Part shown: positions 24,778 through 61,561 of the stretch, piece after piece
How the letters are laid out: every line of letters starts with the position of its first letter
How positions within the stretch are numbered: position 1 is the stretch's first letter
Virus record (IMG/VR): IMGVR_UViG_3300027996_002186
Location: 310,001 to 374,000 of that record
DNA: 64,000 nucleotides
Strand: one strand, 5' to 3'
Position numbers and translations under genes: made by a program
Notes under the pieces: model-generated
Told to the model about the DNA's origin: nothing
The model's database searches: none
Seen by the model: the letters and a program-made list of their open reading frames with translations, nothing else

Positions 24778-25572
24778 ATGATAGTTAAAGAAGATGATAT
24801 AGTATTTGTTACTAATTCACTTTATACAAAGTGGATGGATTACCAATCAAAAATAATTAAAAGGCTTTTTCCAAATAGCGATCATATAATTGTTGATGGA
24901 TCAACACCAGAATTCAAGGCAAATTGGCCAAATTCTTGGTTTTATCATTTAGATGAAATAAAAAAATCAGATAAAAAATACTATATTCATATTGATGAAG
25001 ATTTCTTTTTAACTTCTAAAGAAGAGTTATTAAAAGCTGTCCAAAAAATGGAAGATGAAAATATAGACTTATTGGGGTGTCCGGATGGATATCAACACTT
25101 CAGAGGAGCAAATCCAGTTGCTATAAACACATTTTTTATGATTGGTAGAGTAGAAGATGTTAAGAGGTTGGATGTTGATTTAAAGTCAGCTAAATATTCT
25201 ATTGTTGTTTCTGAGGGCAATATCTATCATTGGTCTAATAACTTTGGGATAAAATTCGAAGAAATATTTAAAGATGATTTCAATTATAGGTGGGAAGATC
25301 AAGGTGGATCCAATTTCAAATATGACCATGAACCGTATTATACTTTCCTTTGGTCAATGAAAGAAATGGGTTGTAAGTTTGATTATTTATATCCATTTTT
25401 TGATGATAGATTTAAATCAACCAATCCTAGATTAGAAAAAGATTCAGATGATATTGGTATACATATGTGGTATACAAGAAATTGTGATAGTAATATGGAT
25501 GTCTGGGGATTACCAAATGTAGAGAGGTATAATTTGGTTGAAAAATATATTAATGAATTATATGAAATCTAA
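24778..25572 (+). CDS. Hypothetical GT-like protein ending the glycan island
   Basis: YIHIDEDFF (DxD-like); context. Confidence 0.45.
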   Translation: MIVKEDDIVFVTNSLYTKWMDYQSKIIKRLFPNSDHIIVDGSTPEFKANWPNSWFYHLDEIKKSDKKYYIHIDEDFFLTSKEELLKAVQKMEDENIDLLGCPDGYQHFRGANPVAINTFFMIGRVEDVKRLDVDLKSAKYSIVVSEGNIYHWSNNFGIKFEEIFKDDFNYRWEDQGGSNFKYDHEPYYTFLWSMKEMGCKFDYLYPFFDDRFKSTNPRLEKDSDDIGIHMWYTRNCDSNMDVWGLPNVERYNLVEKYINELYEI

Positions 25573-25759
25573 AATTAATAGTACTGAGATACAAGATATA
25601 GGTTCTGCTTATGGTATGGATGTAGAAGATGAATTAACTTCGATGTTATCGGAAGAGATAGCTAAATCAATTGATAGAGAAATATTTAAAAGTATGGGTA
25701 TAGAACTAGATAGATTTAAACGAAGAAAAACATCAATTAATAAGATATTTTCCTCTTAA
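25562..25759 (+). CDS. Mini-protein consisting of a major-capsid (gp23-like) helix fragment plus C-terminal tag
   Basis: QDIGSAYGMDVEDELTSMLSEEIAKSIDREI matches T4 gp23 QDLRAVHGMDADAELSGILATEIMLEINREV (recalled); ends RKTSINKIF. Confidence 0.65.
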   Translation: MKSKINSTEIQDIGSAYGMDVEDELTSMLSEEIAKSIDREIFKSMGIELDRFKRRKTSINKIFSS

Positions 25760-25786
25760 ATATTAGATATATAGATATAAATTCCG

Positions 25787-25794
25787 TATATTTG
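25787..25794 (+). promoter_or_regulatory. Bacteroidota -7 box upstream of the HD gene
   Basis: TATATTTG ends 5 nt upstream of the ATG at 25799. Confidence 0.55.
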
Positions 25795-25798
25795 TTAT

Positions 25799-26410
25799 AT
25801 GAACAACAACAAAAACATATCACCATTCACAGACTTCGTTTCTTTAGTCAAAAGAGCTAGAATCTTTGCTACTGAAGCTCATAAAGGAGTTTACCGTAAA
25901 GGTAAAGATGAGAATGGAGAAAAGTTAGAGTATATCACTCATCCTATTGCTGTTGGGAAAATTATACACACTCATAAGAAATCTCATAGGATTGCTGTCT
26001 TAGTAGCAGTAGCCATGTTGCATGATACGGTAGAAGACTGTGAGTGGGTTACTATCGAAGTTATCCGACAAGAGTTTGGTGACTTAATCGCTTCTTTAGT
26101 TGAAGAATTAACTTCTGACCCTAAAGGTCTTGAGCAATTTGGTAAAGAGCAATACTTAATTAACAAAATGACTTTTATGTCAACTTGGGGATTATGTATC
26201 AAATTAGCTGACAGAATTCATAACTTATCTGATGTTCAATCTAAGATTGATAGTGGTAAGAACTCTGATATCAAATGGGCTATCAAATACTCTACACAAA
26301 CTAAAAACATCGTAGCGGCTTTAGAGTCTAAAAGAACGTTAACAAATACTCACAAGGTTTTAGTTGAAGTTATTAAAGAGAAAATCGCACCGGCTTTAGA
26401 ACTAGTCTAA
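25799..26410 (+). CDS. HD-domain (p)ppGpp hydrolase, small alarmone hydrolase (SpoT/Mesh1-like)
   Basis: AH..RK, YITHP, LHDTVED, IKLADRIHNL. Confidence 0.8.
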   Translation: MNNNKNISPFTDFVSLVKRARIFATEAHKGVYRKGKDENGEKLEYITHPIAVGKIIHTHKKSHRIAVLVAVAMLHDTVEDCEWVTIEVIRQEFGDLIASLVEELTSDPKGLEQFGKEQYLINKMTFMSTWGLCIKLADRIHNLSDVQSKIDSGKNSDIKWAIKYSTQTKNIVAALESKRTLTNTHKVLVEVIKEKIAPALELV

Positions 26411-26415
26411 TCAAC

Positions 26416-27015
26416 TTAAATCTTTTGTACAATAGTTGGTAATGTACCAAGTTCAAGAAGTTTACTTTTATTAAGTAAGAACTCAATATCATAAAAGTTA
26501 TAGTTAAAGGTCATTGTAAACTCTTTAGCACTAACTTTTTGTTGTGAGTAATTGAAATCATTATCTGATAAAGACTTTAATACAATCTCATAGAATTTTA
26601 TAACATAAATAGCATCTCTGTGTATATCAAGAGCTGTTATAGTAAATGGGTTTAACCAAGAATTCTCAGTATCTAAATAATGCTTGCTAATAATATCAAA
26701 CATTAACCAATAATTCAAATCAGAATCAACTGATCTAAAAGTTACTTGTAATTCACTTGTAGTTATTATATCTTGTATATTTTTAGCAGGTTTGAAACTT
26801 CTTTCCTTACCTCTCATAGTAATTTGTTTTGGCATATCAAAAGATATACCAGGAAAGTTAACACTCTTCATAGTAGAATTAATATAATCAATAACATTAT
26901 CATACTGTATCCAATTCTTTTCTAGAATTGGTTGGTAAGTTTCAATTATCTCAGCAGGCAAAACATCACCTGGTAGATTGAATATAAACTGACTGGACTG
27001 ACTACTTAATCTCAT
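26416..27015 (-). CDS. Tail-tube-fold structural protein (T4 gp3/gp19/gp54-like)
   Basis: SVNFPGI..ELQVTF..D..LNYW..FTMTFNY pattern; late-promoter operon. Confidence 0.45.
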   Translation of the reverse strand: MRLSSQSSQFIFNLPGDVLPAEIIETYQPILEKNWIQYDNVIDYINSTMKSVNFPGISFDMPKQITMRGKERSFKPAKNIQDIITTSELQVTFRSVDSDLNYWLMFDIISKHYLDTENSWLNPFTITALDIHRDAIYVIKFYEIVLKSLSDNDFNYSQQKVSAKEFTMTFNYNFYDIEFLLNKSKLLELGTLPTIVQKI

Positions 27016-28950
27016 TTAATTTGTTTCATCTGTTTTATTTTCACCAGTTGGTTCCTGAGACACACCTGTTGGAATTGGAGCCGGAGGGACAGGAACTCCT
27101 TGTTTTTTAGTAACGGTCGCTGTTTCTTGTGCTAAACTTGTATCTGGTATAATAGAAGGGTTTGAATTTTGTTTATCCGATGCATCATTAAGATCATTAA
27201 CATTACCCTTATCATCATAAATCTTAAATAATCCGGTGTAAATAACAGATGTTGTTGATTTATTCGAGCCGATTATATAAAACACATTAATTCCTGATGT
27301 GTATATTCTTTTTATCTCAGCAAATTTATTTTGAGTAATTTTGAATGATACTTGACCAATATCTAGGTTAATATCACCACTCTCTACAAATAAAGGAAAT
27401 GCTATTTGATTTTTATCATTTCTAATAGTTAATTTAATTTCATTAAATCCAGTTAAATTAAAATATTCTGGCTGTTCATTTGTACCAGTAGCTATTGAAA
27501 ATTTAACAATATTATCATATGGATAAAGTAATATTTGAATTTTACCTAACCCAAAGAAATTCGTACTATCAAAAGTTGCATTTTCGGATTTACCAATAAT
27601 ATTAAATCTATCTATAAGAACTGGGAAAGGAATATTAACAGTTTCAACAATTACATTACCATTTCCGTTTCGACCATTTCCGGCTCCACCACCATTCCCA
27701 CTTAATAATCCACCAGCAGTAGCAGGACCTGGTGTTTGTGGTGTGTTTATTTTATTATCAACTGTTATAACACCCATTGAATTAGCAACACCCACTAATG
27801 ATGGGTCAATAGCATTCTTTATGTTATATATTTTTGGTTTATACGCATTCTTTAGATTGATTTTCATCAATTTTAATGAATATTTGGAAACTTCATCTTG
27901 TAACATACCATAACTAGCTCTTCTTATTATATAAGATTCATCAACAGCATCAATCAACCTCATCTCAACATCAATGATAGCTGTTGTTGTTGAATATTTA
28001 ATTATAGGTCTATACTCTATTGTCTCATTAAAAGAATCTGTTATAGTAACTGTTATAGTTTTACCTCTTATATTTTGCTCATACATCGTGATATTATATT
28101 GTACATAATATCTATGACCTTGTGAAACGGAGTCGTCTAGAAACTTCTTAAACCCACCTAGTGTGTCATTATAAGTTCCATATATCTCAAAGAAATCACC
28201 ATTTTCAGAATTTTCGATAACTAATCCCATTTTTTCAAATTCAGGAGATTGAGTTATAGTAGTAGTTATTTTAGGATCAGTTAAATAGGTAGTGACTCCA
28301 TTTATAGTTTGTATATTATTAACAAAGTGAAAATCAATGAATATCGGACTGGTTAAACTTAAACCAGAACCATTTGTCAAATTAGCATTTATACTATTTA
28401 CTTTTGGTCTATTATCTTCCAATTGAGTAGAAATTTCACTAAGAGCTGGTATCTCAATTTTAATATTCTTACCCCATAACTTCTCTTGAAAAAGAAGTGG
28501 TGGTGATGTAAAATTCATTAGATATTGCTGACTAACATCAGTCATATCAAAATAAAAGTTAGATAAATCGTAAGTTTTTTGATTTAATGAATCATAAGAA
28601 TAAACTTTTATGTAAAATCCTAAATATTCACCGAATGTCCAGTTTATTGGTAAATGAAATTTAAGAATATCATGTCTTATGGGAGGCCCAGCAGAATAAT
28701 TTTTTGTTTGTAAAAAATTATAATAGTCAGGGTTGACCTTGCCATATCTACCAGATACAGCATCAATTCTAAATAGTTGGTTTCCTTGTGTATTTCCTGT
28801 ACCACTTGTTTCAGTGGCCATGTATGATTGTATCTTCTCCTTTGAGTTTATAAGTATATCATATGCTTCACCTATTAAGTTACCATCATTATATACATAC
28901 TCTAAAAGAATATTTTTATCAAGCTTTACGAACTTCGATATCTTAGACAT
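27016..28950 (-). CDS. Large beta-rich putative virion structural protein
   Basis: 644-aa ORF with G/P-rich linkers; TATATATA at 28973-28980; no recognised motif. Confidence 0.5.
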   Translation of the reverse strand: MSKISKFVKLDKNILLEYVYNDGNLIGEAYDILINSKEKIQSYMATETSGTGNTQGNQLFRIDAVSGRYGKVNPDYYNFLQTKNYSAGPPIRHDILKFHLPINWTFGEYLGFYIKVYSYDSLNQKTYDLSNFYFDMTDVSQQYLMNFTSPPLLFQEKLWGKNIKIEIPALSEISTQLEDNRPKVNSINANLTNGSGLSLTSPIFIDFHFVNNIQTINGVTTYLTDPKITTTITQSPEFEKMGLVIENSENGDFFEIYGTYNDTLGGFKKFLDDSVSQGHRYYVQYNITMYEQNIRGKTITVTITDSFNETIEYRPIIKYSTTTAIIDVEMRLIDAVDESYIIRRASYGMLQDEVSKYSLKLMKINLKNAYKPKIYNIKNAIDPSLVGVANSMGVITVDNKINTPQTPGPATAGGLLSGNGGGAGNGRNGNGNVIVETVNIPFPVLIDRFNIIGKSENATFDSTNFFGLGKIQILLYPYDNIVKFSIATGTNEQPEYFNLTGFNEIKLTIRNDKNQIAFPLFVESGDINLDIGQVSFKITQNKFAEIKRIYTSGINVFYIIGSNKSTTSVIYTGLFKIYDDKGNVNDLNDASDKQNSNPSIIPDTSLAQETATVTKKQGVPVPPAPIPTGVSQEPTGENKTDETN

Positions 28951-32763: not shown

Positions 32764-34046
32764 AATTTTAATAATATTTTTAATGTATAATCTTCTATAT
32801 CCCTATCATCATCGAATTGTCTATCTCCTCTACTCTTCCCGAAAATAACCTCACCGTGGTCCATTGTTGGTAATATTGTTGGTAAAACTTCATCTAACCC
32901 AGATTCTAATTTCCTTAAATTCATCGGTACTGATTTATACGGGTACATACCAACAATACCCTGATCAGTATTACCTATATCAATATAAACACAAGGAACA
33001 TACATAGTTAATATGTTTGCTGGGCTATAATTACGCAATTTTTGTAAATCATATTTATTTTTAACTATGATATCACTATTTCTAACAACCTCATAGTTCA
33101 TAATATCAAAGTTAACACATTGGAATTTTTTATCAGTTACATATTCCTCAGCTTCATCTTGTCTGATATAAACATCATTTTTATACCCACCTATTTTAAA
33201 TGTCGGTAACATAATTGATCTAATTATATCTCTCATTATCATATAAAACCTACTATCATCTTCTGTATCATAAACAGGCATTGTTCCATTATATTTATTC
33301 TTAATTGGTTCATCTTTTTTATAATAATCACCATAAGTTATAGCAGTTGTGACCCATTTACCCTTTTCAGTTGGTATTTCATCCCATATATCATATAGTC
33401 TATCATTAACATAATCTATATCAACTTTCTTCATAGAATTCCAAGTTTTAGTCAAATAATCTTCGATTATACCATACCATTTATCACCAATAAAATGGTT
33501 TGTCCATTTTTTAATATCAGACTCACTTAATTTATTATTCTTCATATTCTGATAATATAAATCATTATAAAAATCAAAAATGCTATATCTTTCTTCGTTG
33601 GATTCATTTAAACTCTCATCCATTGAATTTAATAAATCACCATAATCATCCTCTGAATAAATAAGTAATGATATACCTGGATAACTAAACTCTTCACCAC
33701 CATAAACATCGATGAATCTATCTAATGACATCCAATCTTGTTCCTTTGTAACTTCTACATCAACACCATATCCTTCATCAGCTCTCCAAACATAATCTTC
33801 TATTCTTTTAACAGCATCCTTTATATCATCCCATCTCCAAATCTCATCATTCTTTCTATAAATACCAACACATACCGATCTTATTGAGTCTGAAAACATA
33901 GGTGGTGTGTAATTAGTCTCATCTATAACTACACCAAATCCATCATCAGATAATTCTAATACAATATCCTCTAATTCTCTTTTTAGATTGGAGAATCTAG
34001 TAGAGTCTTCTGATTCAAATAGTTTATATTTCTTTAAGTATTTCAC
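32760..34046 (-). CDS. Putative virion internal protein
   Basis: MKYLKKYKLFES leader; DIVLELSDDG module; internal ESLNES linker. Confidence 0.6.
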   Translation of the reverse strand: MKYLKKYKLFESEDSTRFSNLKRELEDIVLELSDDGFGVVIDETNYTPPMFSDSIRSVCVGIYRKNDEIWRWDDIKDAVKRIEDYVWRADEGYGVDVEVTKEQDWMSLDRFIDVYGGEEFSYPGISLLIYSEDDYGDLLNSMDESLNESNEERYSIFDFYNDLYYQNMKNNKLSESDIKKWTNHFIGDKWYGIIEDYLTKTWNSMKKVDIDYVNDRLYDIWDEIPTEKGKWVTTAITYGDYYKKDEPIKNKYNGTMPVYDTEDDSRFYMIMRDIIRSIMLPTFKIGGYKNDVYIRQDEAEEYVTDKKFQCVNFDIMNYEVVRNSDIIVKNKYDLQKLRNYSPANILTMYVPCVYIDIGNTDQGIVGMYPYKSVPMNLRKLESGLDEVLPTILPTMDHGEVIFGKSRGDRQFDDDRDIEDYTLKILLKF

Positions 34047-35353
34047 TTTCTAATTACTTTAATTCTTTCTGTTTGATACTTCATTATATCAACATCTTGA
34101 TGCTCTGTTAATAAATCAACAATACCTTGATACATTTGTATTGTTATTTTACAATCTGTAATAGCATCGTGATAACCACTCATATTAATACCAAGTACTG
34201 GTCCTATTTTAGACATAGATGATGATATTAATCCATTATCTCTTGGTGAAGTACCAATAAAATCTATTTTCTCTTGAAAAGATGGGTCAGTCTCAGCTAA
34301 CTTCTGTAACAATGGTAAAAAGTATAATTGTATCAACATCTTAGTATCAAATACTTCATTCACAATCTTATTACCATATCTACCACTCAACATAGCCATA
34401 TCAAATGCCGCGTTTTGTGCAATTAATAAACAAGGTTCGTATTCACCTATGAATTTAAAGAAATCATTAACAACAGTTTCTTCGTCTTTGTACTTATATC
34501 CGCCACTACCATAATGGTTGAATCCTAAAACCCATTTAGTTCTATCTTCTGGTTCGTTATATTTAGACTTAGTATCATTTGTTAGTTTTATTTTCTCATC
34601 AAATTGTCCTAACTCCTTGAATTCGTTATTATCAAAATCACATTCAGTTACTAAACAAGATACTTGTGTTAATTGTTCTTTCTTTGGACCATTTAATCCT
34701 GTTGTTTCCACATCAACAAAAATCCAAGGCATATCAGTTTTAGAATCTAACCAAGAAAGTATTTCGGGTATTGATTTATACCACATCTTATTTTCATTTA
34801 TTGATTCTGAAACGTTATTAACTTCAAATTTGAATTCCTTACCATCAGCATGTGAATAAGTAACTTTATCAATGTTCTTAACATTATATTTATAATCGGG
34901 TTTTAGATATTTCTTACCCATACCTTTTTTAACATAAGCAATTGTTATATGTGGTTTATATTCTGGGTATTCATTTGAATTTGGTAATTCGGATAATTCA
35001 TCAAAAAGATTTTGTAATGATCCCTGTGGGTTAATATTGAATTTAACAACATCAAATTTATCATTCTCAAATATATCAACACCATCAACTTCTATATTTA
35101 TATCACCTTCAAAGGTATCGAATATAGACTTAACTTCCTCATTTGATACTTCCTTATGTAAACCATATAAAAGTGTAAGGTGTGGTCTCTTTTGTACACC
35201 ATACGTTGAATCACCGTCACTTTCATAGATGTCTTCTGGGTCTATCCAAGATGTTATTTCTTCCCAATTATTAACTGGTACGTCAACCATAACACAACCA
35301 TATTCATAGCCGTTTATTGATTCTTTAATAAATTCTTTATATTTCTTTAACAT
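34043..35353 (-). CDS. 2H phosphoesterase + DEDDh 3'-5' exonuclease fusion
   Basis: PHLTLLY and PHITIAY (two HxT motifs); FVDVETTG, AQNAAFD, HDAITD; MLKKYKEFIKES leader; ESINE linker between the domains. Confidence 0.8.
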   Translation of the reverse strand: MLKKYKEFIKESINGYEYGCVMVDVPVNNWEEITSWIDPEDIYESDGDSTYGVQKRPHLTLLYGLHKEVSNEEVKSIFDTFEGDINIEVDGVDIFENDKFDVVKFNINPQGSLQNLFDELSELPNSNEYPEYKPHITIAYVKKGMGKKYLKPDYKYNVKNIDKVTYSHADGKEFKFEVNNVSESINENKMWYKSIPEILSWLDSKTDMPWIFVDVETTGLNGPKKEQLTQVSCLVTECDFDNNEFKELGQFDEKIKLTNDTKSKYNEPEDRTKWVLGFNHYGSGGYKYKDEETVVNDFFKFIGEYEPCLLIAQNAAFDMAMLSGRYGNKIVNEVFDTKMLIQLYFLPLLQKLAETDPSFQEKIDFIGTSPRDNGLISSSMSKIGPVLGINMSGYHDAITDCKITIQMYQGIVDLLTEHQDVDIMKYQTERIKVIRK

Positions 35354-42712: not shown

Positions 42713-42898
42713 TTATCCATTAAATACTTTATTAATTTTATTTTTCCTATTACTTTGTTTAATATCGGTCCAAATATCTGAACGAAAAGTTAATGATTTC
42801 CACTCACCACTTTGAAAAATATAGTTATTTGATTCAATCGTGTTATAATAAATATCTCCTTCTATTGGATTCTCTGGTACTGTTGATAATACCAACAT
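42713..42898 (-). CDS. Mini-protein with fibre-like repeat and C-terminal tag
   Basis: PENPIEGDIYYNT..YIFQSGEW; ends RKNKINKVF. Confidence 0.5.
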   Translation of the reverse strand: MLVLSTVPENPIEGDIYYNTIESNNYIFQSGEWKSLTFRSDIWTDIKQSNRKNKINKVFNG

Positions 42899-43989
42899 TA
42901 AGCTTCAAAATTCTTAGATCTCTTTAGTTTTTCAAGTATATACTTTTCATCCATTGAAATCTTCGTTGGTATTCTAATATTAACAACTACGAATAAATCA
43001 CCCAATCCTAAATTAACATCAGGTATACCTTTTCCAGAAACTCTTATAGTTCTTCCGTGAGGTGTTCCTTCATCGATAGTAATTGGTAATTCACCGTGTG
43101 GTGTTTTAACTTTAAGATGTGCTCCTAAGATAGCATCTATAACGGATACTTCTTTCTCAACAATTAAATTATTACTATCTCTTTTGAAATAGAATTCTCT
43201 GAGTTCATCTATCATAATATGTAAATCCCCAGGAACACCATCTCTTACATGATTACCATAACTTCTCATATTAAGTTGCATACCGGCAGAAACACCAGCC
43301 GGGATATCTACCTCAACAACTTCATCTTTAACACTTGTACCACTTCCGTGACAAACACCACATTTATTACTGATTTGTTTACCACCGCCTTGACAATCTG
43401 GACAAGTTGCTTGTTGTCTAACTTGTCCGAATGGTGTCTGTTGTAAAACCACTCTACTTCCTCTACCACCACAAGGAATACAATCTTTAACACCAGATCC
43501 TCCTTTACCAGAACAACTATTACAAGAATCCTGTCTCTTATATTTTATCTTCTTAGTAGTACCATTTAAGACATCCTCAATCGACAATGTAACTTTTATT
43601 CTTAAATCAGATCCTCTATTTTTCCTTCTTTGTTTTGGTCCGCCGAATTGTCCGCCGCTTCCGAAAATATCACCAAATTGACTAAAAATATCTTCCATAT
43701 TAAATCCATGACCATATTGACCACCGTCACCTCCTCCACCATTGGAGAATGGATTACCTTGTCCAAATGGACTACCACCTGGTCCATATCTATCATAACT
43801 TTCTCTCTTTTCTTTAGATGAGAGTGTATCATATGCTTCTGCTGCTTCTTTGAATTTAGATTCAGACTCAGCATTTCCTGGGTTTTTATCTGGGTGATGT
43901 TTCATCGCCATTTTGCGATAAGCTCTCTTAATCTGATCCTCAGATGCCGTCTTATCTACTCCTAGTGTGTTGTAATAATCTTTTGCCAT
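42898..43989 (-). CDS. dnaJ: DnaJ co-chaperone
   Basis: J-domain HPD, G/F-rich region, four CxxCxGxG zinc repeats. Confidence 0.95.
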
Positions 43990-43992
43990 AAC

Positions 43993-44355
43993 TTATGCTA
44001 ATATCTTTGTTAGTTTAATATCTCTATATATTTGTTTGGTGCTATCCGTTAGTCTTATTTCTGTGTATTTACTATATTGTATAATAAATTGATCAACTCC
44101 GTTCTCTTTACTTATCCTATAATTCATAACAGGCATTTCCTCAATTATTTCCGCAAATACTGTTTCTATTTGAGATATTTTCAATTCTCCACTCACAACA
44201 TCAGTTAATCTATTACAAAAATAATCCATTAGTGGTGTTGCTGTTTCCACAACTTTTTTTAGAAATTTTTCACTATTATATCCACGGTTGACGCCAATTG
44301 GAATTCTACTTATCCCTAATCCTGGATTGGATATAACATACCAATCTACTATCAT
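43993..44355 (-). CDS. Hypothetical protein with C-terminal tag
   Basis: Ends RDIKLTKIL. Confidence 0.55.
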   Translation of the reverse strand: MIVDWYVISNPGLGISRIPIGVNRGYNSEKFLKKVVETATPLMDYFCNRLTDVVSGELKISQIETVFAEIIEEMPVMNYRISKENGVDQFIIQYSKYTEIRLTDSTKQIYRDIKLTKILA

Positions 44356-50460: not shown

Positions 50461-52341
50461 ATGAGTAAAGAAACTACAATAATTGGTATTGACTTAGGAA
50501 CAACAAATAGTTGTTTAGCAGTTGTTCAAGGTGGAGAACCTATTGTTATTACTAATTCAGAAGGTAAGAGAACTACCCCATCAGTTGTTGGATTCACAGA
50601 CAATGATAGAAAGATTGGTGATCCAGCCAAAAGACAAGCGGTTACTAATCCTGAGAAAACTGTTTATTCAATTAAACGTTTCATAGGTAAAGACTTTTCT
50701 GTTTGTAAAAGTGAAGTATCAAAGGTACCTTACAAGTTAGTAAAAACGGGGTCAAATGTCCCAGGTGTTAAAATAGATGATAGAGTCTATACACCACAAG
50801 AAATTTCAGCAATGATTCTACAAAAAATGAAGAAAACGGCTGAAGAGTTTTTAGGTCACGAGGTGGAAAGAGCAGTTATTACTGTTCCAGCTTATTTTGG
50901 TGATGCTGAAAGAACAGCAACTATCGAAGCAGGAGAAATTGCTGGTTTGAAAGTTGAAAGAATTATAAACGAACCAACTGCTGCAGCTTTAGCTTACGGG
51001 TTAGACAAAAAGAATACAGATTCTAAGATTCTTGTATTTGATTGTGGTGGTGGTACACATGATGTTTCAGTTTTAGAAATTGGTGATGGTGTTTTTGAAG
51101 TTAAATCTACGGATGGTGATACTCATTTAGGTGGTGATGATTTCGATAATGCGATTATTGACTGGATGGTAAAAGAATTCAAATCAGAATATGGTATGGA
51201 TTTAACAAAAGATCCAATGGCTCTTCAAAGGTTGAAGGAAGCTGGTGAAAAAGCAAAAATCGAGTTATCAACATCAACACAAACTGAAATAAATCTACCT
51301 TACATCACAGCTAAAGATGGTACACCGTTACACTTTGTTAAGAAGTTATCAAACTCTAAGTTTGAACAAATGACTTCTAAGTTAGTGGATAGAACTATCG
51401 CTTGTGCGAAAAGTGCTCTCAAAAGCGCAGGGTTGAAACCAGCAGACATTGACGAGGTTATACTTGTTGGTGGTTCTACTAGAATCCCAGCTATTCAAAA
51501 AGCTGTTGAAGATTATATTGGTAAAACACCTAATAAATCAGTAAACCCAGATGAAGTTGTTGCTCTTGGAGCGGCTATTCAAGGAGCTGTTTTAGGAGGA
51601 GGAATTACAGATGTTTTACTTCTTGATGTAACACCCCTTTCACTAGGTATTGAAACAATGGGGTCAGTAATGACTAGATTGATTGATGCTAATACAACGA
51701 TTCCTACTCGTAAGGCGGAAACGTTTTCAACGGCATCTGATAATCAACCATCTGTTGAGATTCATGTTTTACAAGGTGAAAGACCAATGGCAAAAGATAA
51801 TCGTGACTTAGGTAGATTCCATTTAGATGGTATAATGCCCGCTCCAAGAGGTATTCCTCAAGTTGAAGTTACATTAGATATCGATGCTAATGGAATCCTT
51901 TCTGTTTCTGCTAAAGATAAGGCTACTGGTAAAGAGAATAAAATTCGAATTGAAGGTGGTTCTCAATTATCTAAAGAAGAAATTGAAAGAATGAAGTCTG
52001 AAGCTGAGGCTAACGCTGAAACAGATAAAATCGAAAGAGATAAAGTTGATAAACTTAATGAAGTAGATAACTTAATGTTTCAGACAAATAAGCAGATGAA
52101 GGAATTCTCTGAACAATTAACGGAGGAGGATGTTAATTCTCTAAAGTCTGATCTTGAAGAGGTTCAAAAAGCTCATTCTGAACAAGACATTGAAAAGATG
52201 GATGAAACATCCAAGAAATTGAGTGAAACTTGGTCAGTAATCAGTACTAGGCTATACCAAGAAACAAATGAGGCCGAATCGACAGAAGAGGTCGTAGATG
52301 AAGGTGAAGTGGAAGACACTCCATTTGAAGAGGTAGATTAA
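50461..52341 (+). CDS. dnaK: DnaK (Hsp70)
   Basis: [32 protein letters not shown]-like linker DVLLLDV, GIETMG. Confidence 0.97.
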
Positions 52342-54100: not shown

Positions 54101-55060
54101 TTATAATGATATTAGCATTTCTACTAATTCTTTTTGCGGAAAGCAATCATACTTATCTTTACGAACATTTGTGTGTGTCCATAACCCGAATTGGTTTGCA
54201 TTATACGCATCTTCATTAAATTCAAATGCTTCTGCAGGTGGCATTCCATATCTCAATAATTTAGGCAATCCATGTACCAAGTCCATTTTAGGATATATGT
54301 CTTTTAGATGTAGTAATAACAATCTAAGACTTTCTATTTGTTTAGTTGTGTATGCGTGCCAATATTGATGGCCTCTGAATTCGTAACCTAGATCACAAAC
54401 AAATTCTGGCATAACCTCGGTATTAACATATGTGTAGAATTTACCGTTTTTCTTAGTAAGATATCCGAAGTTACATAACTCAACTCCACCAGAAAACTTT
54501 GAAATGTTAAAACCACCGACCTTTCCTAGATGCCACCCTAGATAATTATCAGGAAAACATTCCACCGTAACTCCATCATATTTAGCTTCATTTCCTTTTA
54601 CATTAGAACCCCCGATTACGTACTGTGTAGCAACTCTACCTCTAGAATCTTTATTCCAACTATTAACTGTGTTATATGGATTATCCCAACCAGCGGTGTG
54701 GTGTATGAAAAAACCAAGTGGTTCAATCTTACCATAATCTCTTACATATTCATCTGAATCCAAATATACCTTATCAATAACTAGACCATCCTTTGTTGTG
54801 TATTTACCATGATACGCTAGCTTATCATCTTTATCGTTAGATGGTTCTTCATTTTTAGTTGTTGATGATTGATCAGTATCAATACCAGCAGCTTCCCATG
54901 TTTTCCTTCCAACTATACCATCAGCAACTAATCCGTTGTCTTTTTGAAATTGTATAGTTAACCTTTCCGTTCCAGAACCGAATATACCATCTGGTGTCGT
55001 TTTTAAAACTTGTTGCCATTCAACTACTTCAGATCCTCTGTCTCCTTTTCTAATTGTCAT
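54101..55060 (-). CDS. Peptidoglycan-binding + Amidase_2 endolysin
   Basis: PG-binding repeats DGIFG/DGIVG; HHTAG, VELCN, THTNVR, KYDCFP. Confidence 0.85.
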   Translation of the reverse strand: MTIRKGDRGSEVVEWQQVLKTTPDGIFGSGTERLTIQFQKDNGLVADGIVGRKTWEAAGIDTDQSSTTKNEEPSNDKDDKLAYHGKYTTKDGLVIDKVYLDSDEYVRDYGKIEPLGFFIHHTAGWDNPYNTVNSWNKDSRGRVATQYVIGGSNVKGNEAKYDGVTVECFPDNYLGWHLGKVGGFNISKFSGGVELCNFGYLTKKNGKFYTYVNTEVMPEFVCDLGYEFRGHQYWHAYTTKQIESLRLLLLHLKDIYPKMDLVHGLPKLLRYGMPPAEAFEFNEDAYNANQFGLWTHTNVRKDKYDCFPQKELVEMLISL

Positions 55061-55093: not shown

Positions 55094-56125
55094 TCATAAA
55101 GTGTTTAACATTTCTATCATCTCCTTCTGTGGGAATATATCAAATTTACCTGTTCTTACTTGTGTATTGTTTCTAAGACCACCATGACTAAACCACTTAA
55201 CATCATACTCAAACCATTGTTCGTCATAAATACCAGTCTCAATTTGTATATCCCATCTTTTTTTCAAATATAAAATAAGTTTTCTAGTACTTTCTATTTG
55301 AGCATCTGTATATCTTTCATAATGTGTATATCCTCTGAAAGGTTTATCTAACTCAACAACATCCTCATCATTAATAGGTTGATTAACATAATTATAATAT
55401 CTACCATCTTTACCTAATGTCAATGGTCCATAATTACATATCTCAATACCAATAGATTTTGAGTTTAATGCTTTACTTTTTGTGTGTGATATATCTAAAT
55501 GATAAGCCCAGTGTCTATCATCAAATGATCTTAATACTTTACCATCCCATAATATATCATTTTTAGATGAAGAACTTCTACCTATTACAAATTGTGTTCC
55601 AACTCTTAATGGTTTCGGATTACCCTTTTTATCTAAAATAGCATTACCCTTTTTATCTTTTTGGAAATCTCTTTCCCAACCACCGATAGTCCAATCTGGT
55701 CTAGACCCACCAGCAGTGTGGTGTAACCAAATTGTATCTTTTACTGTTTCTGTTTTATAATATTCATCATCTTCTAAAAAACAATCATATATTGTTAATG
55801 AATCCTCGCCGATATAAGATATTTTAAATGGTATATTTTCATTTCTAGGAGTTGGAGTGATAACAACATCAGTCTCAATACCCTTTGACTCTTTTTCTTT
55901 TTTATTTTCTAAATGGTTAGTTATTTGACTCCAAGTTTGTGGACCAATAACACCATCAGCTTTTATACCAACAGACCTTTGATAATTAGTAACTGATACT
56001 AATGTATTTTGAGTGAAGTTCCCATCAATTATATTTTTGTGATATCCATATTCTTTTAATCTAGTTTGTACCCAACGGACATCATCACCGGACATTTTCA
56101 GCATTAAAATTCTCTTTAGTTTCAT
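55094..56125 (-). CDS. Second PG-binding + Amidase_2 paralog (Zn-ligand His replaced)
   Basis: DGNFT/DGVIG; HHTAG, IEICN; GLRNNTQVR where the paralog has GLWTHTNVR. Confidence 0.8.
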   Translation of the reverse strand: MKLKRILMLKMSGDDVRWVQTRLKEYGYHKNIIDGNFTQNTLVSVTNYQRSVGIKADGVIGPQTWSQITNHLENKKEKESKGIETDVVITPTPRNENIPFKISYIGEDSLTIYDCFLEDDEYYKTETVKDTIWLHHTAGGSRPDWTIGGWERDFQKDKKGNAILDKKGNPKPLRVGTQFVIGRSSSSKNDILWDGKVLRSFDDRHWAYHLDISHTKSKALNSKSIGIEICNYGPLTLGKDGRYYNYVNQPINDEDVVELDKPFRGYTHYERYTDAQIESTRKLILYLKKRWDIQIETGIYDEQWFEYDVKWFSHGGLRNNTQVRTGKFDIFPQKEMIEMLNTL

Positions 56126-56640
56126 AAACTATTATTATTTTTATATCTTTCTTTTTGCTTATTATCTAAATATGCTTTCAAATCAGCATAAGTAACATTT
56201 CCTGGGTTTTGAAGTATATTTTCAGCAATACCATCTGCCTTAACTTCAAGCTTCTTAAGCTCTTCATTCTTAACCCTTTCCTCATACTGATCTTCAACAT
56301 TCTTTAGAATGTGTCCTAGATAAAAATCTATATTATTTTTGATTACCATAATTTTATCGAAAGTATATAAAAATTCCTCGAAGGTATCACCATAATAAAC
56401 AGCGAAGGTATCATCTTTTATAAAATGATCAGCATAGAATTTTATATCACCAACATTTCCTTGGCCATATATCGTAGCTTTGTATTGATTAAAATAGAAA
56501 TAAGTGAATTTATCGTTTGGGTTAAAAGTTCTTTTACCATTTTTCTCAACAGTAGCAACTAATCCAAGATTTATCCTAAAATAACTTGATCTTTTAAATT
56601 CTGTTATAGTTTGATATGATGAAACAACGTGTAAAGCCAT
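56122..56640 (-). CDS. Hypothetical protein
   Basis: 172-aa ORF heading the amidase operon; AATAAATA at 56645-56652. Confidence 0.55.
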   Translation of the reverse strand: MALHVVSSYQTITEFKRSSYFRINLGLVATVEKNGKRTFNPNDKFTYFYFNQYKATIYGQGNVGDIKFYADHFIKDDTFAVYYGDTFEEFLYTFDKIMVIKNNIDFYLGHILKNVEDQYEERVKNEELKKLEVKADGIAENILQNPGNVTYADLKAYLDNKQKERYKNNNSL

Positions 56641-59011: not shown

Positions 59012-59420
59012 ATTTTTTTATTTCTATTCCAGCTTCCTTTAGGAAATCCAAACCGGATGTATCTTTATATTCTATAACATAAACCAATCTTTTTATACCA
59101 GATTGTAAAATCAATTTAGAACAATCTTTACAAGGTGAATGTGTTTGATATAAAGTAGCACCATCACATGAATGTCCATGTCTAGCACATTTCAGAATGG
59201 CGTTTGCTTCTCCGTGTATAACACTCCAACTTGTAGTACCATCATCTATTTCACAAGCGTTATCGAACCCTGTGGGTGTACCATTATAACCATCTGATAT
59301 AATCATACCATTCTTTACAATAAGAGCACCTACTTGTTTACGTGTACAATGAGAGAGATTGGACCACTCTTTAGCCATCTCTAAATATGTTTTATCATAT
59401 CTTTCTTGCTTAGTATCCAT
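58998..59420 (-). CDS. dCMP deaminase
   Basis: HCTRKQVGA, GYNG, HGEAN, PCKDC. Confidence 0.92.
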   Translation of the reverse strand: MDTKQERYDKTYLEMAKEWSNLSHCTRKQVGALIVKNGMIISDGYNGTPTGFDNACEIDDGTTSWSVIHGEANAILKCARHGHSCDGATLYQTHSPCKDCSKLILQSGIKRLVYVIEYKDTSGLDFLKEAGIEIKKYDVW

Positions 59421-59571
59421 TACTTCGATTTTTATTAAATATTCTTTTAATTTTCTCTTTTCTAACTTCTCTGGATAAGTTTAATATATTCTTAATAGCC
59501 CAATCAGTACTGATATATTGATTACCAGTTATCATAAGCTCTTTCATTAATTCCCACTTAAAGTTATTCAT
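59410..59571 (-). CDS. Mini-protein with C-terminal tag (start reassigned to MNNFKW)
   Basis: Ends RKEKIKRIF..; FKWELMKELMITGNQY weakly resembles a portal helix. Confidence 0.5.
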   Translation of the reverse strand: MNNFKWELMKELMITGNQYISTDWAIKNILNLSREVRKEKIKRIFNKNRSNGY

Positions 59572-59737
59572 TGAATATATTTTTAATTTTATACATCCTC
59601 TCAGATCTTTTATCAAGCCCATTAATCATGTCACTAACAACCTGACTAGTAACTATGTAATTACCAACTCCTCTTCTCGAATATTTGTTTATTTTAGAAG
59701 CAGTTTTTAATATTTTATCAAATAAATTTTTAGACAA
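59564..59737 (-). CDS. Mini-protein: major-capsid (gp23-like) fragment + C-terminal tag (TTG start; not in track)
   Basis: Manual translation LSKNLFDKILKTASKINKYSRRGVGNYIVTSQVVSDMINGLDKRSERMYKIKNIFNE*; matches T4 gp23 LLFQIDKEAVEIARQTGRGEGNFIIASRNVVNVL (recalled). Confidence 0.65.
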   Translation of the reverse strand: MSKNLFDKILKTASKINKYSRRGVGNYIVTSQVVSDMINGLDKRSERMYKIKNIFNE

Positions 59738-59743
59738 TGATAT

Positions 59744-60283
59744 TTATTTCTTTTTGTCTATTTGCATTATATTAAGATCCATAGGTGTTTTTCTACCAAA
59801 AATAGCAACGGATACTGTAATCCTATCACCATTAATAGCTTCAATGGTACCAATCATTGTATCAAATGGGCCATCTGTTATTGAGACATCCTCACCAACA
59901 ATAAACATATCACTAATATCCATTTCTTTTTGTTCTTCTTGTTGACCTATCATTCTTTTTATCTCTTTTTCTTTCATAGGATTTATACTACCATCTCTTT
60001 CTGTTAAAAATCCGGTTGCTCCGTCACAACCACTTAGAAAGTATTTCAACTCACCAATAGAATTGGCTTCAACAAAAATATAACCAGGAAACATTATTTT
60101 ATCTCTGACAACTTTTTTACCATTTTTAAGATTCACAACAGTTTCCATTGGCACAAGTACTTGACTAACAGCCTTTTGTAATTCCGGTTCTTTTTGTATT
60201 CTCTCACAAACTTTTCTTTCTTTATTACCCTGTGTTCTGATAATATACCAATTCATTGTTTTTTCTTTTGTTCTAGTTCTCAT
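59744..60283 (-). CDS. nusG: Transcription elongation factor NusG
   Basis: NGN domain WYIIRT..E.KV, FPGYIFVE; KOW GE.V.I.DGPF, IFGRKTP. Confidence 0.9.
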   Translation of the reverse strand: MRTRTKEKTMNWYIIRTQGNKERKVCERIQKEPELQKAVSQVLVPMETVVNLKNGKKVVRDKIMFPGYIFVEANSIGELKYFLSGCDGATGFLTERDGSINPMKEKEIKRMIGQQEEQKEMDISDMFIVGEDVSITDGPFDTMIGTIEAINGDRITVSVAIFGRKTPMDLNIMQIDKKK

Positions 60284-60600
60284 AATATTTGTATTAATTT
60301 ATTTATCTTAAAGTCTCTTAATTTCTCTTTAGCTTCACTATTTTTTGATAACCATTTCTGGAATTCTTCATTACTTGTAACTTCTTCTATTTTAGAAACC
60401 TTATTAAGTTCAATATATTTTATTAAAATTGAATCTTTTTTATTCTCATCTGATTTTTGATATATTTCAAAATCTACACTATCAAACTCAACCATACAAA
60501 AATAAAACTTATCACCCTTTAAATAATTAAAGAAAACTAGGTTATCAAACCTTCCCATTTCCTCTTCCTTAAATAATATTATTTTATCCGATCTTATCAA
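60280..60600 (-). CDS. Hypothetical protein with C-terminal tag
   Basis: Ends RDFKINKLI. Confidence 0.55.
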   Translation of the reverse strand: MIRSDKIILFKEEEMGRFDNLVFFNYLKGDKFYFCMVEFDSVDFEIYQKSDENKKDSILIKYIELNKVSKIEEVTSNEEFQKWLSKNSEAKEKLRDFKINKLIQIL

Positions 60601-60976
60601 GAGCTTTATAATATTTTAATTCCTCTTTAATAAAATCAAAATGGTTTTCAATTAAATAGTGTAGGTCTAAATCCTTAATCTTTAATTTCATTAAAAGTAG
60701 TTTGAAGTCTTTGTTTGGTATAACTGGCTTCTCTTTTTTACTTTTAGACCAAAACCAATTAGGGTATGATTTATTTAACATAAAATAATACCATAAGTCC
60801 ATAGAGGATACTTTATCTATACTTTTTGAGTTAAGAAGTTGTGATTTATCTGGAAACTTTTTAGAAAAATACCGATTGAATATAAAGAAGTTTTTATCCT
60901 TTTCATCATCCGTAATATTAACCCAATCACTTTTATTTCTAAACATTGCGTTAGCAACATCAACTAATTCTGCCAT
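60584..60976 (-). CDS. Possible T4 gp62-like clamp-loader small subunit
   Basis: FIFNRYFS..QLLN..W.K pattern; replication-gene neighbourhood. Confidence 0.4.
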   Translation of the reverse strand: MAELVDVANAMFRNKSDWVNITDDEKDKNFFIFNRYFSKKFPDKSQLLNSKSIDKVSSMDLWYYFMLNKSYPNWFWSKSKKEKPVIPNKDFKLLLMKLKIKDLDLHYLIENHFDFIKEELKYYKALDKIG

Positions 60977-60977
60977 A

Positions 60978-61175
60978 TTACTTGTATATTATTACAACCT
61001 CTTTGTTTGTTTTCAATTTAGTATCATTTATACATTTAATAGCTAAATCAAAAGTATCAAATACACCATAACCAGCATCACTACCATTCATCGGTTTTTC
61101 ATAATCATACCAACATTTTTCAGTAACCCAATATTTATCTTGTTTATCCTTTAATAATTCTAAAAATAGTTTCAT
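60978..61175 (-). CDS. Small hypothetical protein
   Basis: 65-aa ORF in operon. Confidence 0.45.
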   Translation of the reverse strand: MKLFLELLKDKQDKYWVTEKCWYDYEKPMNGSDAGYGVFDTFDLAIKCINDTKLKTNKEVVIIYK

Positions 61176-61561
61176 AATATTTTATTTAATGAGTGTTCTC
61201 TCCACTTCTGTTTATCTAATTCTCTAATAAAATCAACACCAAATAAATCTACTAATTCTTCTGTTGTTGGTTCCCTTTTGAATTTGTTTTTCTCTGTTAT
61301 AATAAATCCATTTTCCAATTCATATTCAATCTCTCCGCTTATTGGATTATACAAGGTCCTTTTAATTTCACTCTTTTTAGATTTTTTTAATTTTGTTAAA
61401 AGATGATTTATCTTTTCTGGTAAATCATCTTTATCAGGATTACTAACACAATAATCTTCACAAAAAAAACTAATTATCTCTGCTAAATTTTTGTTGACAA
61501 TTCCTAAACCCTGCGTTATAGGAATCCATTTGTCAAGTATTTCACTTTTTGTATTTATCAT
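61172..61561 (-). CDS. Protein with MCP-N-terminus-like segment and C-terminal tag
   Basis: ILDKWIPITQGLGI resembles the L.EKW.P.L start of gp23-type capsid proteins; ends REHSLNKIL. Confidence 0.5.
   Translation of the reverse strand: MINTKSEILDKWIPITQGLGIVNKNLAEIISFFCEDYCVSNPDKDDLPEKINHLLTKLKKSKKSEIKRTLYNPISGEIEYELENGFIITEKNKFKREPTTEELVDLFGVDFIRELDKQKWREHSLNKIL

What the first reader, a model, noticed from the sequence alone, without database searches (positions are those of the whole stretch)
25562..61561. Free-standing major-capsid-protein fragments fused to the C-terminal tag: candidate structural decoys
Seen: 25562..25759 carries QD...GMD.E.EL..ML..EI...I.REI, and 59564..59737 (missed by the ORF track) carries LF.KI.K.A..I....RRG.GNYIV.S..V. 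Both match distinct segments of T4 gp23 as I recall them. 61172..61561 resembles the gp23 N-terminus (DKW.PI). Weaker resemblances are to tube (4898), fibre repeat (42713) and portal (59410) proteins. Each fragment is too small to fold as HK97, and each ends in the RxxK[IL] tag. Known: several defence systems are triggered by capsid, portal or tail proteins (Lit by the gp23 Gol peptide, CapRel, Avs). Inference: this is a library of epitope decoys that titrate or misdirect such sensors, or of assembly modulators.
Basis: partly seen in the sequence, partly recalled or inferred. Interest (0 to 1): 0.85.

Follow-up and report, generated by a model that had tools for sequence, protein, structure and literature searches.

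The report
Capsid-protein pieces as tagged mini-genes
A giant marine phage carries several small, conserved genes, each encoding one building block of its own T4-type capsid protein joined to a short C-terminal motif that about one in ten of its genes share; I found no description of this arrangement, and its function is unknown.

Summary
The core observation holds. The window is a non-structural region of a ~0.55-0.64 Mb AT-rich marine megaphage related to LR745206 and LR756502.

ORF 25538-25759 matches Pfam Gp23 above its gathering score. It aligns to the capsid protein's long helix region (hhalign E 3e-8). ORF 59564-59737 matches the next helix-strand element more weakly (Pfam E 3e-4, below threshold; custom MCP profile E 4e-5). 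The first 44 residues of ORF 61172-61561 align in register with the capsid protein's N-terminus (hhalign E 4e-6, probability 87%). The tube and portal resemblances are not supported.

All three ORFs end in h-R-x-x-[K/S]-[I/L]-x-x-[I/L/V]-[L/F]. This peptide-level motif is about 60-fold enriched at C-termini and occurs in about 10% of genes.

In the complete relative LR745206, 7-11 further dispersed small ORFs match other capsid-protein segments. Two more match the prohead protease-scaffold gene. Most of these carry the tag.

These ORFs are not debris. The first belongs to a conserved free-standing family (dN/dS about 0.25 in its core), and the third to a family of more than 100 clusters.

Function is unresolved. 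I favour capsid-protein mimics that dock onto head-assembly partners (confidence 0.35). Immune decoys remain a live rival.

The parts
25538..25759 (+). mini1: 65-73 aa protein (likely ATG at 25553 or 25562). A long helix homologous to the gp23-type MCP long-helix region is followed by a loop and a C-terminal tag helix.
   Evidence: Pfam Gp23 30.5 bits, above GA 24.4. hhalign E 3e-8 to MCP 328-372. 27 free-standing homologues of 53-74 aa. AF2 model of two helices, residues 9-46 and 53-66, mean pLDDT 81. dN/dS 0.25 in the core.
25562..25693 (+). MCP-like segment of mini1: the strand end plus the long conserved helix (GMD..E.EL..ML..EI...ID.EI).
   Evidence: The top PDB sequence hits are T4 gp24 and gp23 at the same element. 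MCP-invariant D347, L356 and I364 align with mini1-invariant D23, L32 and I40.
25724..25750 (+). C-terminal tag of mini1 (RKTSINKIF). RRxxSINKI is invariant across the 24 aligned sequences and the final F nearly so.
59564..59737 (-). mini2: 57 aa, TTG start 6 nt after the NusG stop. It combines an MCP helix-strand element (..RRG.GNYIVTS..) with the tag RMYKIKNIF (59573-59599).
   Evidence: Pfam Gp23 E 2.8e-4, profile 222-259. MCP HMM E 4e-5. hhalign to MCP 412-446. Divergent homologue in LR756502. An RNA-library contig covers 59548-59885 with 0 mismatches.
61172..61561 (-). mini3: 129 aa. Its N-terminal 44 residues (61430-61561) resemble the MCP N-terminus. An unrelated alpha/beta middle part follows, then the tag REHSLNKIL (61175-61201).
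   Evidence: hhalign 1-44 to 1-44, probability 87%, E 3.9e-6. Family of 112 clusters at 50% identity; the 32 diverse members aligned all keep KW.P and the C-terminal R, with near-universal hydrophobics. Low-confidence model.
59410..59622 (-). Tagged small ORF (likely start at 59571, overlapping the mini2 stop), tag RKEKIKRIF.
   Evidence: Orthologue in LR745206. No match to portal or to any family.
42713..42898 (-). Tagged 61-aa ORF directly downstream of DnaJ. Its N-terminal ~35 aa match a motif found near the N-terminus of large phage proteins. Tag RKNKINKVF.
   Evidence: PHROG E 1.6e-5 to 2e-4. Orthologue in LR745206.
4898..5320 (+). Not part of the phenomenon on present evidence.
   Evidence: No Pfam hit. 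Only a weak PHROG hit of unknown function. No hit to large proteins of the relative.
56122..56640 (-). 172-aa ORF without a tag, with a marginal match to the MCP 420-493 region.
   Evidence: MCP HMM E 0.046. Orthologue in LR745206 E 0.12. No Pfam hit. Treat as a lead only.

Best explanation
These are real genes for small soluble proteins with two parts. The first part is one conserved structural element of this phage lineage's T4-type (gp23) capsid protein. In mini3 it is the N-terminal arm or propeptide, in mini1 the long conserved helix, and in mini2 the helix-strand that follows it. The second part is a short C-terminal helix carrying the motif h-R-x-x-[K/S]-[I/L]-x-x-[I/L/V]-[L/F/I], which about 10% of the phage's genes share.

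I think they most likely act as capsid-protein mimics in head morphogenesis. The copied element would dock where that element normally docks: on the capsid protein itself, or on its protease/scaffold partner. That partner could belong to the phage's own head or to a co-infecting T4-type phage. The shared C-terminal helix would serve as a common docking peptide to one partner.

Shown: homology to distinct MCP segments, free-standing conserved genes, purifying selection, peptide-level enrichment of the tag at C-termini, and presence in an RNA library. Inferred: that the mimic binds MCP or scaffold, what the tag binds, and the biological outcome.
For: - All three ORFs are homologous to three different MCP segments.
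- The MCP-invariant residues in the helix coincide with the invariant residues of the mini1 family. This argues that the same contacts are preserved.
- In the complete relative LR745206 the MCP has more partial small-ORF matches than any other large protein: 5 at phmmer E<0.01, against 2 for the next best. A three-MCP HMM finds 7 small ORFs in that relative at E<0.05 (5 at E<1e-3), and four more come only from weaker or other searches. Together they cover MCP 5-118, 44-98, 201-216, about 300-383, 411-505 and 493-542.
- The other two proteins with tagged fragments are parts of the gene next to the MCP. That gene is a gp21-like prohead protease fused to a 13-residue-repeat scaffold region. All donors are therefore head-assembly partners.
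- Gp23 is the only Pfam family found more than once among 89 tagged proteins.
- mini1 is predicted with confidence as a helix-loop-helix ending in the tag helix. The coat-binding domain of the P22 scaffolding protein has the same layout. There, R293 and K296 (R-x-x-K spacing) hold the coat N-arm (PMC9965877).
- Conservation: 27 mini1 homologues at a fixed genomic position, 112 mini3 clusters, dN/dS 0.25-0.4.
Against: - No binding was or could be tested here.
- The genes sit among replication, transcription and sugar-metabolism genes, not in the head module.
- Tagged genes are depleted from transcription units headed by the promoter-like motif that precedes portal, protease and MCP (13/97 against 350/905, p 2e-7). 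This fits early expression better than co-assembly.
- T4-type scaffold proteins that I could read have no such C-terminal motif.
- Most tagged proteins show no similarity to any larger protein.
- mini1 is no closer to its own clade's MCP than to T4-like MCPs, so co-evolution with the phage's own MCP is not evident.
- An immune-decoy role predicts the same sequence features.
Confidence: 0.35

Rival explanations
1. Immune decoys. The MCP-, protease- and scaffold-like pieces are made early. They occupy host sensors that recognise capsid proteins and prevent their activation. The tag may hand the bound sensor to a shared machine.
For: - Capsid proteins are among the phage proteins reported to trigger bacterial immune sensors. 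Avs7, Avs8, Avs10 and Dsr1 sense MCPs, and Avs7 does so together with EF-Tu (PMC13581612). Lit/Gol and CapRel are further examples, cited from memory.
- The fragments lie in non-structural gene blocks and are depleted from head-promoter units.
- Gene content turns over between relatives: mini2 and mini3 are absent from LR745206, which has other fragments.
- One LR745206 fragment (291407-291880) includes the stretch aligned with the T4 Gol region. The Gol coordinates are from memory.
Against: - Avs sensors are reported to recognise conserved core folds, not short linear pieces.
- A fragment that binds a sensor might trigger it rather than block it.
- I found no precedent for such decoys in the literature searched.
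- The host and its defences are unknown.
- mini1 and mini3 are slowly evolving and widely conserved, which is unlike typical arms-race genes.
Confidence: 0.2
2. Exapted debris. Partial duplicates of head genes were captured in frame by members of a large tagged small-protein family. The MCP similarity is historical and present function has nothing to do with capsids.
For: - Tagged proteins are overwhelmingly ORFans with unrelated N-terminal parts.
- Some MCP-like ORFs lack a clear tag (93266-93520 and 554784-555284 in LR745206).
- Similarity to the phage's own MCP is low (22-42%).
Against: - The MCP-like core of mini1 is its most conserved part (dN/dS 0.25; invariant positions are those invariant in MCPs).
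- Only head-assembly proteins are repeated donors.
- The mini3 N-terminal motif is kept across the 32 diverse representatives aligned, out of 112 clusters.
Confidence: 0.2
3. Bait-plus-degron adaptors. The tag is a recognition signal for the phage's own proteostasis machines (Lon-like protease, Hsp70/DnaJ). MCP-like baits deliver bound targets to them, or the tag simply times the removal of early proteins.
For: - The same 64-kb window encodes Lon, DnaJ and a full Hsp70 (815 bits). Tagged ORFs flank DnaJ.
- The tag is a basic-hydrophobic terminal peptide. From memory, it resembles the MuA-type C-terminal ClpX signal RRKKAI.
- Tagged genes look early.
Against: - The tag is not strictly at the extreme C-terminus: 0-12 residues follow it, and about 15 are internal.
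- Aspartate is common at position +1, which is unfavourable for DnaK binding (from memory).
- No test was possible.
Confidence: 0.1
4. Packaged head-internal proteins. The tag is a capsid-targeting or cargo-loading peptide, comparable to encapsulin cargo peptides or the T4 capsid-targeting sequence. MCP-like N-termini add targeting to the scaffold core.
For: - A short terminal peptide is shared by about 100 unrelated small proteins.
- The mini3 family starts exactly like the MCP.
- Giant phages package many proteins (general knowledge).
Against: - Tagged genes are depleted from units with the head-gene promoter motif and from the structural region (9 of 179 genes at 100-250 kb).
- About 100 distinct cargo species is implausibly many.
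Confidence: 0.1
5. Chance similarity in an AT-rich genome combined with spurious ORFs.
For: mini2 alone is below the Pfam threshold, and it has only one near-identical database homologue.
Against: - mini1 exceeds the curated threshold.
- Three independent methods agree, and the matches fall on successive MCP segments.
- Homologues are conserved.
- The tag is about 60-fold enriched at C-termini with genome-typical synonymous codons.
Confidence: 0.02

Closest known systems
T4 gp24 vertex protein and other MCP paralogues (Pfam PF07068 Gp23)
   Same: Derived from the gp23-type capsid protein. The mini1 profile's best PDB hits are gp24 and gp23 at the same helix.
   Different: gp24 is a full-length HK97-fold paralogue. 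These ORFs cover 35-50 residues of the fold each, are dispersed outside the head module and carry an unrelated C-terminal motif. No full-length second MCP copy was found in LR745206.
C-terminal coat-binding helix-loop-helix of the P22 scaffolding protein gp8, and satellite mimics of scaffold C-termini such as SaPI CpmB (the latter from memory)
   Same: A small C-terminal helical motif with basic residues in R-x-x-K spacing that docks on the coat N-arm (PMC9965877). mini1 is predicted as a helix-loop-helix ending in such a helix. The satellite proteins are small proteins that mimic part of a head-assembly protein.
   Different: No sequence homology was shown. The motif here is on about 100 mostly unrelated proteins. 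The T4-type scaffolds I inspected lack it. Binding is untested.
Encapsulin cargo-loading peptides and the T4 capsid-targeting sequence (from memory)
   Same: A short terminal peptide shared by otherwise unrelated proteins, in a system built on an HK97-fold shell.
   Different: The genes look non-late, and there are far more of them than known cargo sets. There is no evidence of packaging.
Capsid-derived triggers of bacterial immunity (T4 Gol peptide/Lit and CapRel from memory; Avs7/Dsr1, PMC13581612)
   Same: Parts of the capsid protein are the relevant ligands.
   Different: Those are segments of the real MCP acting as triggers. Here the phage itself encodes separate conserved copies, and no sensor is known.
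Closterovirus Hsp70 homologue with capsid-protein-derived accessory proteins (from memory)
   Same: A virus encoding its own Hsp70 together with proteins carrying duplicated capsid-protein domains that are used in virion assembly.
   Different: That is a plant RNA virus with whole-domain duplications and no shared terminal tag. It is an analogy only.

Membership tests
Pfam PF07068 Gp23 (T4-type major capsid protein) | Score at or above the curated gathering threshold (24.4 bits) | tested here: met
   Met for mini1 only (30.5 bits). mini2 scores 20.9 bits, which is not met. mini3 has no hit.
Pfam PF07068 Gp23 (T4-type major capsid protein) | Covers the HK97-type fold, i.e. most of the 376-position profile, so that it can form capsomers | tested here: not met
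   The matches cover profile positions 159-194 and 222-259 only. The proteins are 57-129 aa long. They are homologous fragments, not capsid proteins.
Pseudogene or gene debris | Disrupted frames, no conservation, neutral substitution pattern | tested here: not met
   Intact ORFs in 27 (mini1) and 15 or more (mini3) database homologues, with 112 clusters for mini3. dN/dS is 0.25-0.43. Position is syntenic.
Scaffold-type coat-binding C-terminal motif (P22 gp8-like) | C-terminal helix-loop-helix with basic residues three apart | tested here: met
   AF2 model of mini1 has helices 9-46 and 53-66, with pLDDT 85-97 in the structured part. The tag has R at position 0 and K/S at +3. This is a resemblance of form only.
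Scaffold-type coat-binding C-terminal motif (P22 gp8-like) | Binds the capsid-protein N-arm or procapsid | not testable with these tools
   No multimer prediction or experiment is available.
Capsid-targeting or cargo-loading peptide | Shared terminal peptide on unrelated proteins | tested here: met
   96 of 1002 genes carry it within 12 aa of the C-terminus, an enrichment of about 60-fold over interior positions.
Capsid-targeting or cargo-loading peptide | Cargo made with the head (late) and found in virions | tested here: inconclusive
   Tagged genes are depleted from units headed by the motif that precedes the head genes (13/97 against 350/905). The timing class of that motif is unproven, since it also precedes the RNR small-subunit gene. 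No virion data exist.
Anti-defence decoy | Binds and neutralises a host sensor of the mimicked protein | not testable with these tools
   The host and its sensors are unknown.
PIP-like or T4 gp45 clamp-binding C-terminal peptide (considered) | Present at the C-termini of clamp clients such as the flap endonuclease | tested here: not met
   The h-x-x-h-h spacing resembles a PIP box. The FEN/RNase H homologue 61542-62522 and its two orthologues nevertheless lack the tag.

The most novel reading that the evidence does not exclude
The megaphage runs a proteome-wide address system. About 10% of its genes encode small bait modules that end in one docking peptide. A dedicated subset of baits copies the major elements of the capsid protein, prohead protease and scaffold. 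These baits intercept whatever binds those elements, either host immune sensors of capsid proteins or the head proteins of competing T4-type phages. They then couple the intercepted partner to a single phage machine (Hsp70/DnaJ-Lon, or the procapsid).
Probability: 0.2. Interest if true: 0.9.

Novelty: categorically new. Interest (0 to 1): 0.72.

Why it matters
If the capsid-protein pieces are functional mimics, this would be a viral strategy I have not seen described: encoding a tiled set of single structural elements of one's own capsid protein as separate, conserved proteins.

Either reading would be new biology. The mimics could control or sabotage HK97-type head assembly, or they could blunt capsid-sensing immunity.

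The findings also give concrete, testable peptides for interfering with T4-type capsid assembly or with MCP sensors.

The C-terminal motif by itself marks about 100 ORFan genes per genome as one functional class. That could open a tenth of the dark proteome of the largest known phages to experiment.

Tried and rejected
- **Tube, portal and fibre claims.** No family hit and no hit to the relative's large proteins for 4898-5320 and 59410-59622. ORF 42713-42898 does not match the 707-aa protease-scaffold protein.
- **DNA-level explanation of the tag** (promoter, terminator, mobile-element end, or initiation region of the next gene). Rejected. Information content follows codon positions 1-2. Synonymous codon use at R, K, I and L equals the genome-wide use. 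No conserved bases flank the motif. mini1 keeps the tag where no same-strand gene follows.
- **Recoding or read-through.** mini2 lies in frame with NusG behind a TAA stop, but its LR756502 homologue is not next to NusG. Stops follow quickly downstream of every mini-ORF. There are no tRNAs in the window.
- **Foreign (T4-like) origin of mini1.** Identity to megaphage MCPs and to T4-like MCPs is about equal at 0.24-0.42, so this is not resolved.
- **Tagged proteins as a general fragment library.** Not enriched for matches to large proteins.
- **Structure searches.** The mini3 model is poor (pLDDT 62) and has no PDB match. The mini1 hairpin has no Foldseek match. The ESM Atlas gave no lead.
- **Unbiased profile search with mini3** over 1.8 billion proteins. 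It found only small family members and no MCP. The MCP link for mini3 therefore rests on hhalign and tblastn position only.
- **Silent cassettes for gene conversion of the MCP.** Rejected because identity is too low (22-42% at the amino-acid level).
- **T4-type scaffold C-termini.** They show no tag.
- **Literature.** Searches found no description of these genes or of the motif.

Full report
**What the window is.** The sequence is 26-35% G+C. Megablast links it at about 80% identity to two uncultured phage genomes of 635 and 642 kb, LR745206 and LR756502. These belong to the clade of the largest known phages, and marine relatives are described in PMC9723777. The same DNA occurs in many seawater metagenomes, and one protein of the window sits on a 551-kb contig.

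The window holds no head or tail genes. It encodes a Lon-like protease, a roughly 25-kb run of sugar-modifying enzymes, SSB, an exonuclease and an RNR subunit. It also encodes DnaJ, a full Hsp70, an RNA ligase, two cell-wall amidases, dCMP deaminase, NusG and a flap endonuclease.

**The observation.**
- **mini1.** ORF 25538-25759(+) scores above the curated threshold of Pfam Gp23 (30.5 against 24.4 bits, E 3e-7) on profile positions 159-194. It also hits the PHROG major-head-protein family.
- **mini2.** ORF 59564-59737(-) hits the same Pfam model on the next conserved stretch, 222-259. The score is 20.9 bits (E 3e-4), below threshold.
- **mini3.** ORF 61172-61561(-) hits no library model.
- **tblastn of mini1.** It finds about 2,000 T4-type capsid genes.

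**Comparison with the lineage's own capsid protein.** The window lacks the capsid gene, so I fetched all of LR745206. Its T4-type head module reads portal (Portal_T4, 195 bits), then a 707-aa protein, then a 560-aa gp23-type MCP. The 707-aa protein has a weak gp21-protease N-terminus, about fourteen 13-residue repeats and an acidic region.

Profile-profile comparison against an alignment of this MCP with a T4-type and a Flavobacterium-phage MCP gave these results:

| Family | Aligned MCP residues | hhalign probability | E-value |
|---|---|---|---|
| mini1 | 328-372 | 95% | 3e-8 |
| mini3 | 1-44, matched to mini3 residues 1-44 in register | 87% | 3.9e-6 |
| mini2 | 412-446 | 55% | 1.2e-4 |

An HMM built from the three MCPs, searched against 1,099 proteins, gave mini1 E 1.7e-9, mini2 E 4e-5 and mini3 E 0.03. 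The mini1 profile's best hits in the whole PDB are T4 gp24 and gp23 at the same helix.

The tube (4898) and portal (59410) resemblances have no support. ORF 42713 matches only an N-terminal motif of large phage proteins of unknown function.

**The tag.** All three ORFs end in R-x-x-[K/S]-[I/L]-x-x-I-[F/L].
- With a strict pattern, all 10 matches in the window's 97 genes lie within about 10 residues of a C-terminus.
- In LR745206 the rate is 6.1 per 1000 positions at C-termini against about 0.1 elsewhere.
- With a slightly wider pattern, 96 of 1,002 genes carry the tag within 12 residues of the end. Their median length is 97 aa, and about 15 convincing copies are internal.
- The consensus is h-R-[D/E/N/K]-x-K-[I/L]-x-x-[I/L/V]-[L/I/F].
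- Selection acts on the peptide. Nucleotide information follows codon positions 1 and 2, synonymous codon use at the conserved residues equals genome usage, and no flanking DNA is conserved.
- Tagged proteins are soluble, mildly acidic ORFans.
- Among 89 of them, the only Pfam family seen more than once is Gp23. PHROGs adds nothing.

**The phenomenon is larger than the window.** In LR745206 the MCP has more partial small-ORF matches than any other large protein: five at phmmer E<0.01, against two for the next best. With the MCP HMM and BLAST, the dispersed ORFs are:

| LR745206 ORF | MCP segment matched | Tag |
|---|---|---|
| 291407-291880 | 5-118 | RDRKIDSIT, directly after the MCP-like part |
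| 93266-93520 | 44-98 region | no clear tag |
| 554784-555284 | 44-98 region | no clear tag |
| 598978-599391 | 201-216 | tag |
| 222206-222391 | about 290-320 (marginal match) | tag |
| 440158-440361 (mini1 orthologue) | 328-383 | tag |
| 104947-105339 | 420-497 | tag |
| 207176-207907 | 343-530 | tag |
| 255010-255237 | 493-542 | tag |
| 224359-225165 | weak match to the C-terminal half | tag near the N-terminus |

Two further tagged ORFs copy parts of the gene next to the MCP. ORF 460435-460686 carries three scaffold repeats (55% identity, E 1e-15). ORF 194897-195382 matches part of the protease domain.

Tagged small proteins in general are not enriched for matches to large proteins (4 of 98 against 19 of 708). 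Head-assembly proteins are thus special donors. The 735-kb phage LR756501 also shows four MCP-like places.

**Real genes, not debris.**
- mini1 has 27 free-standing homologues of 53-74 aa. RRxxSINKI of the tag is invariant, and so are D, L, L-S, E and I-D in the helix. The helix positions coincide with MCP-invariant D347, L356 and I364.
- mini1 always lies at the 3' end of a variable sugar-gene operon. That operon converges on a conserved 199-aa plus ~640-aa gene pair.
- Pairwise dN/dS for mini1 is 0.28-0.43, and 0.25 in the MCP-like core.
- mini3 belongs to a family of 112 clusters at 50% identity, almost all 100-180 aa. The 32 diverse members I aligned all keep the N-terminal KW.P motif and the C-terminal R, with near-universal hydrophobic positions.
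- mini2 is young or fast-evolving. It has one near-identical database homologue and one 25%-identical homologue in LR756502, and none in LR745206.
- A metatranscriptome contig of 338 nt with no mismatch covers all of mini2 and the end of NusG. Other RNA-library contigs cover neighbouring genes. DNA carry-over cannot be excluded.
- AlphaFold predicts mini1 as a long helix (residues 9-46), a loop and a tag helix (53-66), with pLDDT 85-97 over the structured part. The mini3 model is poor.

**Mechanism.** The data show a two-part architecture: one conserved capsid-protein element plus a clade-wide docking-type peptide. All repeated donors are proteins that contact each other in the prohead.

The conserved residues of mini1 are those conserved in capsid proteins. 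This suggests the copied element keeps its normal contacts. I therefore favour mimicry in head morphogenesis, meaning docking onto the MCP or the protease/scaffold of the phage itself or of a co-infecting T4-type phage. The helix-loop-helix with R-x-x-K spacing recalls the coat-binding end of the P22 scaffolding protein. This is inference, at confidence about 0.35.

Several points count against it. The genes lie in non-structural blocks. A strong promoter-like motif, T[AT]ATATATA, has 72% of its 258 copies in the 5% of the genome that is intergenic. It lies 10-40 nt upstream of 183 genes, including portal, protease and MCP. Only 13 of 97 tagged genes fall in units headed by it, against 350 of 905 other genes (p 2e-7). 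The motif's timing class is unproven, because it also precedes the RNR small-subunit gene.

That idea gains plausibility from the reported sensing of MCPs by Avs7, Avs8, Avs10 and Dsr1, but it has no direct support. A bait-plus-degron reading is suggested by the phage's own Lon, DnaJ and Hsp70 in the same window. Exaptation of partial duplicates and packaged cargo are further rivals.

**Novelty.** Pfam, PHROGs, the PDB, the ESM Atlas and literature searches gave no described family for the tag or for MCP-fragment mini-proteins. The nearest known things are full-length MCP paralogues (gp24), scaffold C-terminal coat-binding motifs and their satellite mimics, terminal cargo peptides, and capsid-derived immune triggers. 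None of them combines a tiled set of single capsid elements with a proteome-wide terminal motif.

Noticed in passing
window 50461-52341 (+), 42898-43989 (-), 5339-7453 (+): The phage encodes its own full-length Hsp70/DnaK (815 bits), a complete DnaJ (J, Zn-finger and C-terminal domains) and a Lon-like AAA+ protease. Tagged small ORFs directly flank DnaJ (42713-42898 and 43993-44355).
   Followed up: partly
LR745206 genome-wide (L006-L018); window at e.g. 1187, 28981, 38445: The promoter-like motif T[AT]ATATATA has 258 copies, 72% of them in the 5% of the genome that is intergenic. It sits 10-40 nt upstream of 183 genes, including portal, protease-scaffold and MCP. Genes with the C-terminal tag are depleted from the units it heads.
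   Followed up: partly
LR745206 198546-200669 (L025:8546-10669): The gene just upstream of the MCP fuses a weak gp21-like prohead-protease N-terminus to about fourteen tandem 13-residue repeats (YSEYLAENLDKNI), an acidic stretch and a C-terminal domain. It appears to be a protease-scaffold fusion.
   Followed up: partly
window 59738-59746 (-): mini2 lies in the same reading frame as NusG, separated only by a TAA stop and two codons, and it starts with TTG. This is probably coincidental, since the LR756502 homologue is not next to NusG.
   Followed up: partly
window 34043-35353 (-): A 436-aa protein combines a 2'-5' RNA ligase / Acb1-like phosphoesterase region (Acb1 E 9e-6, just below threshold) with a DEDD exonuclease domain. 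It may be an anti-CBASS-type nuclease.
   Followed up: no
window 26416-27015 and 27016-28950 (-): A conserved 199-aa plus ~640-aa gene pair of unknown function always converges on mini1 in every relative examined, while the gene upstream of mini1 varies. The 640-aa gene is preceded by the promoter-like motif.
   Followed up: partly
LR745206: about 15 genes, e.g. 71455-71883, 194897-195382, 332300-332968, 357716-358123: The tag also occurs internally, often 15-55 residues from the N-terminus and followed by D/N-G/E. It looks as if a tagged mini-ORF had fused to the next gene, so the tag marks module ends.
   Followed up: no
window 54101-55060 and 55094-56125 (-): Two adjacent paralogous genes each combine a peptidoglycan-binding domain with an N-acetylmuramoyl-L-alanine amidase domain.
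   Followed up: no
window 1200-26410 (+): A roughly 25-kb co-directional block of glycosyltransferases, epimerases, methyltransferases and related enzymes has a single promoter-like motif at its head. mini1 is its last or second-to-last gene.
   Followed up: no
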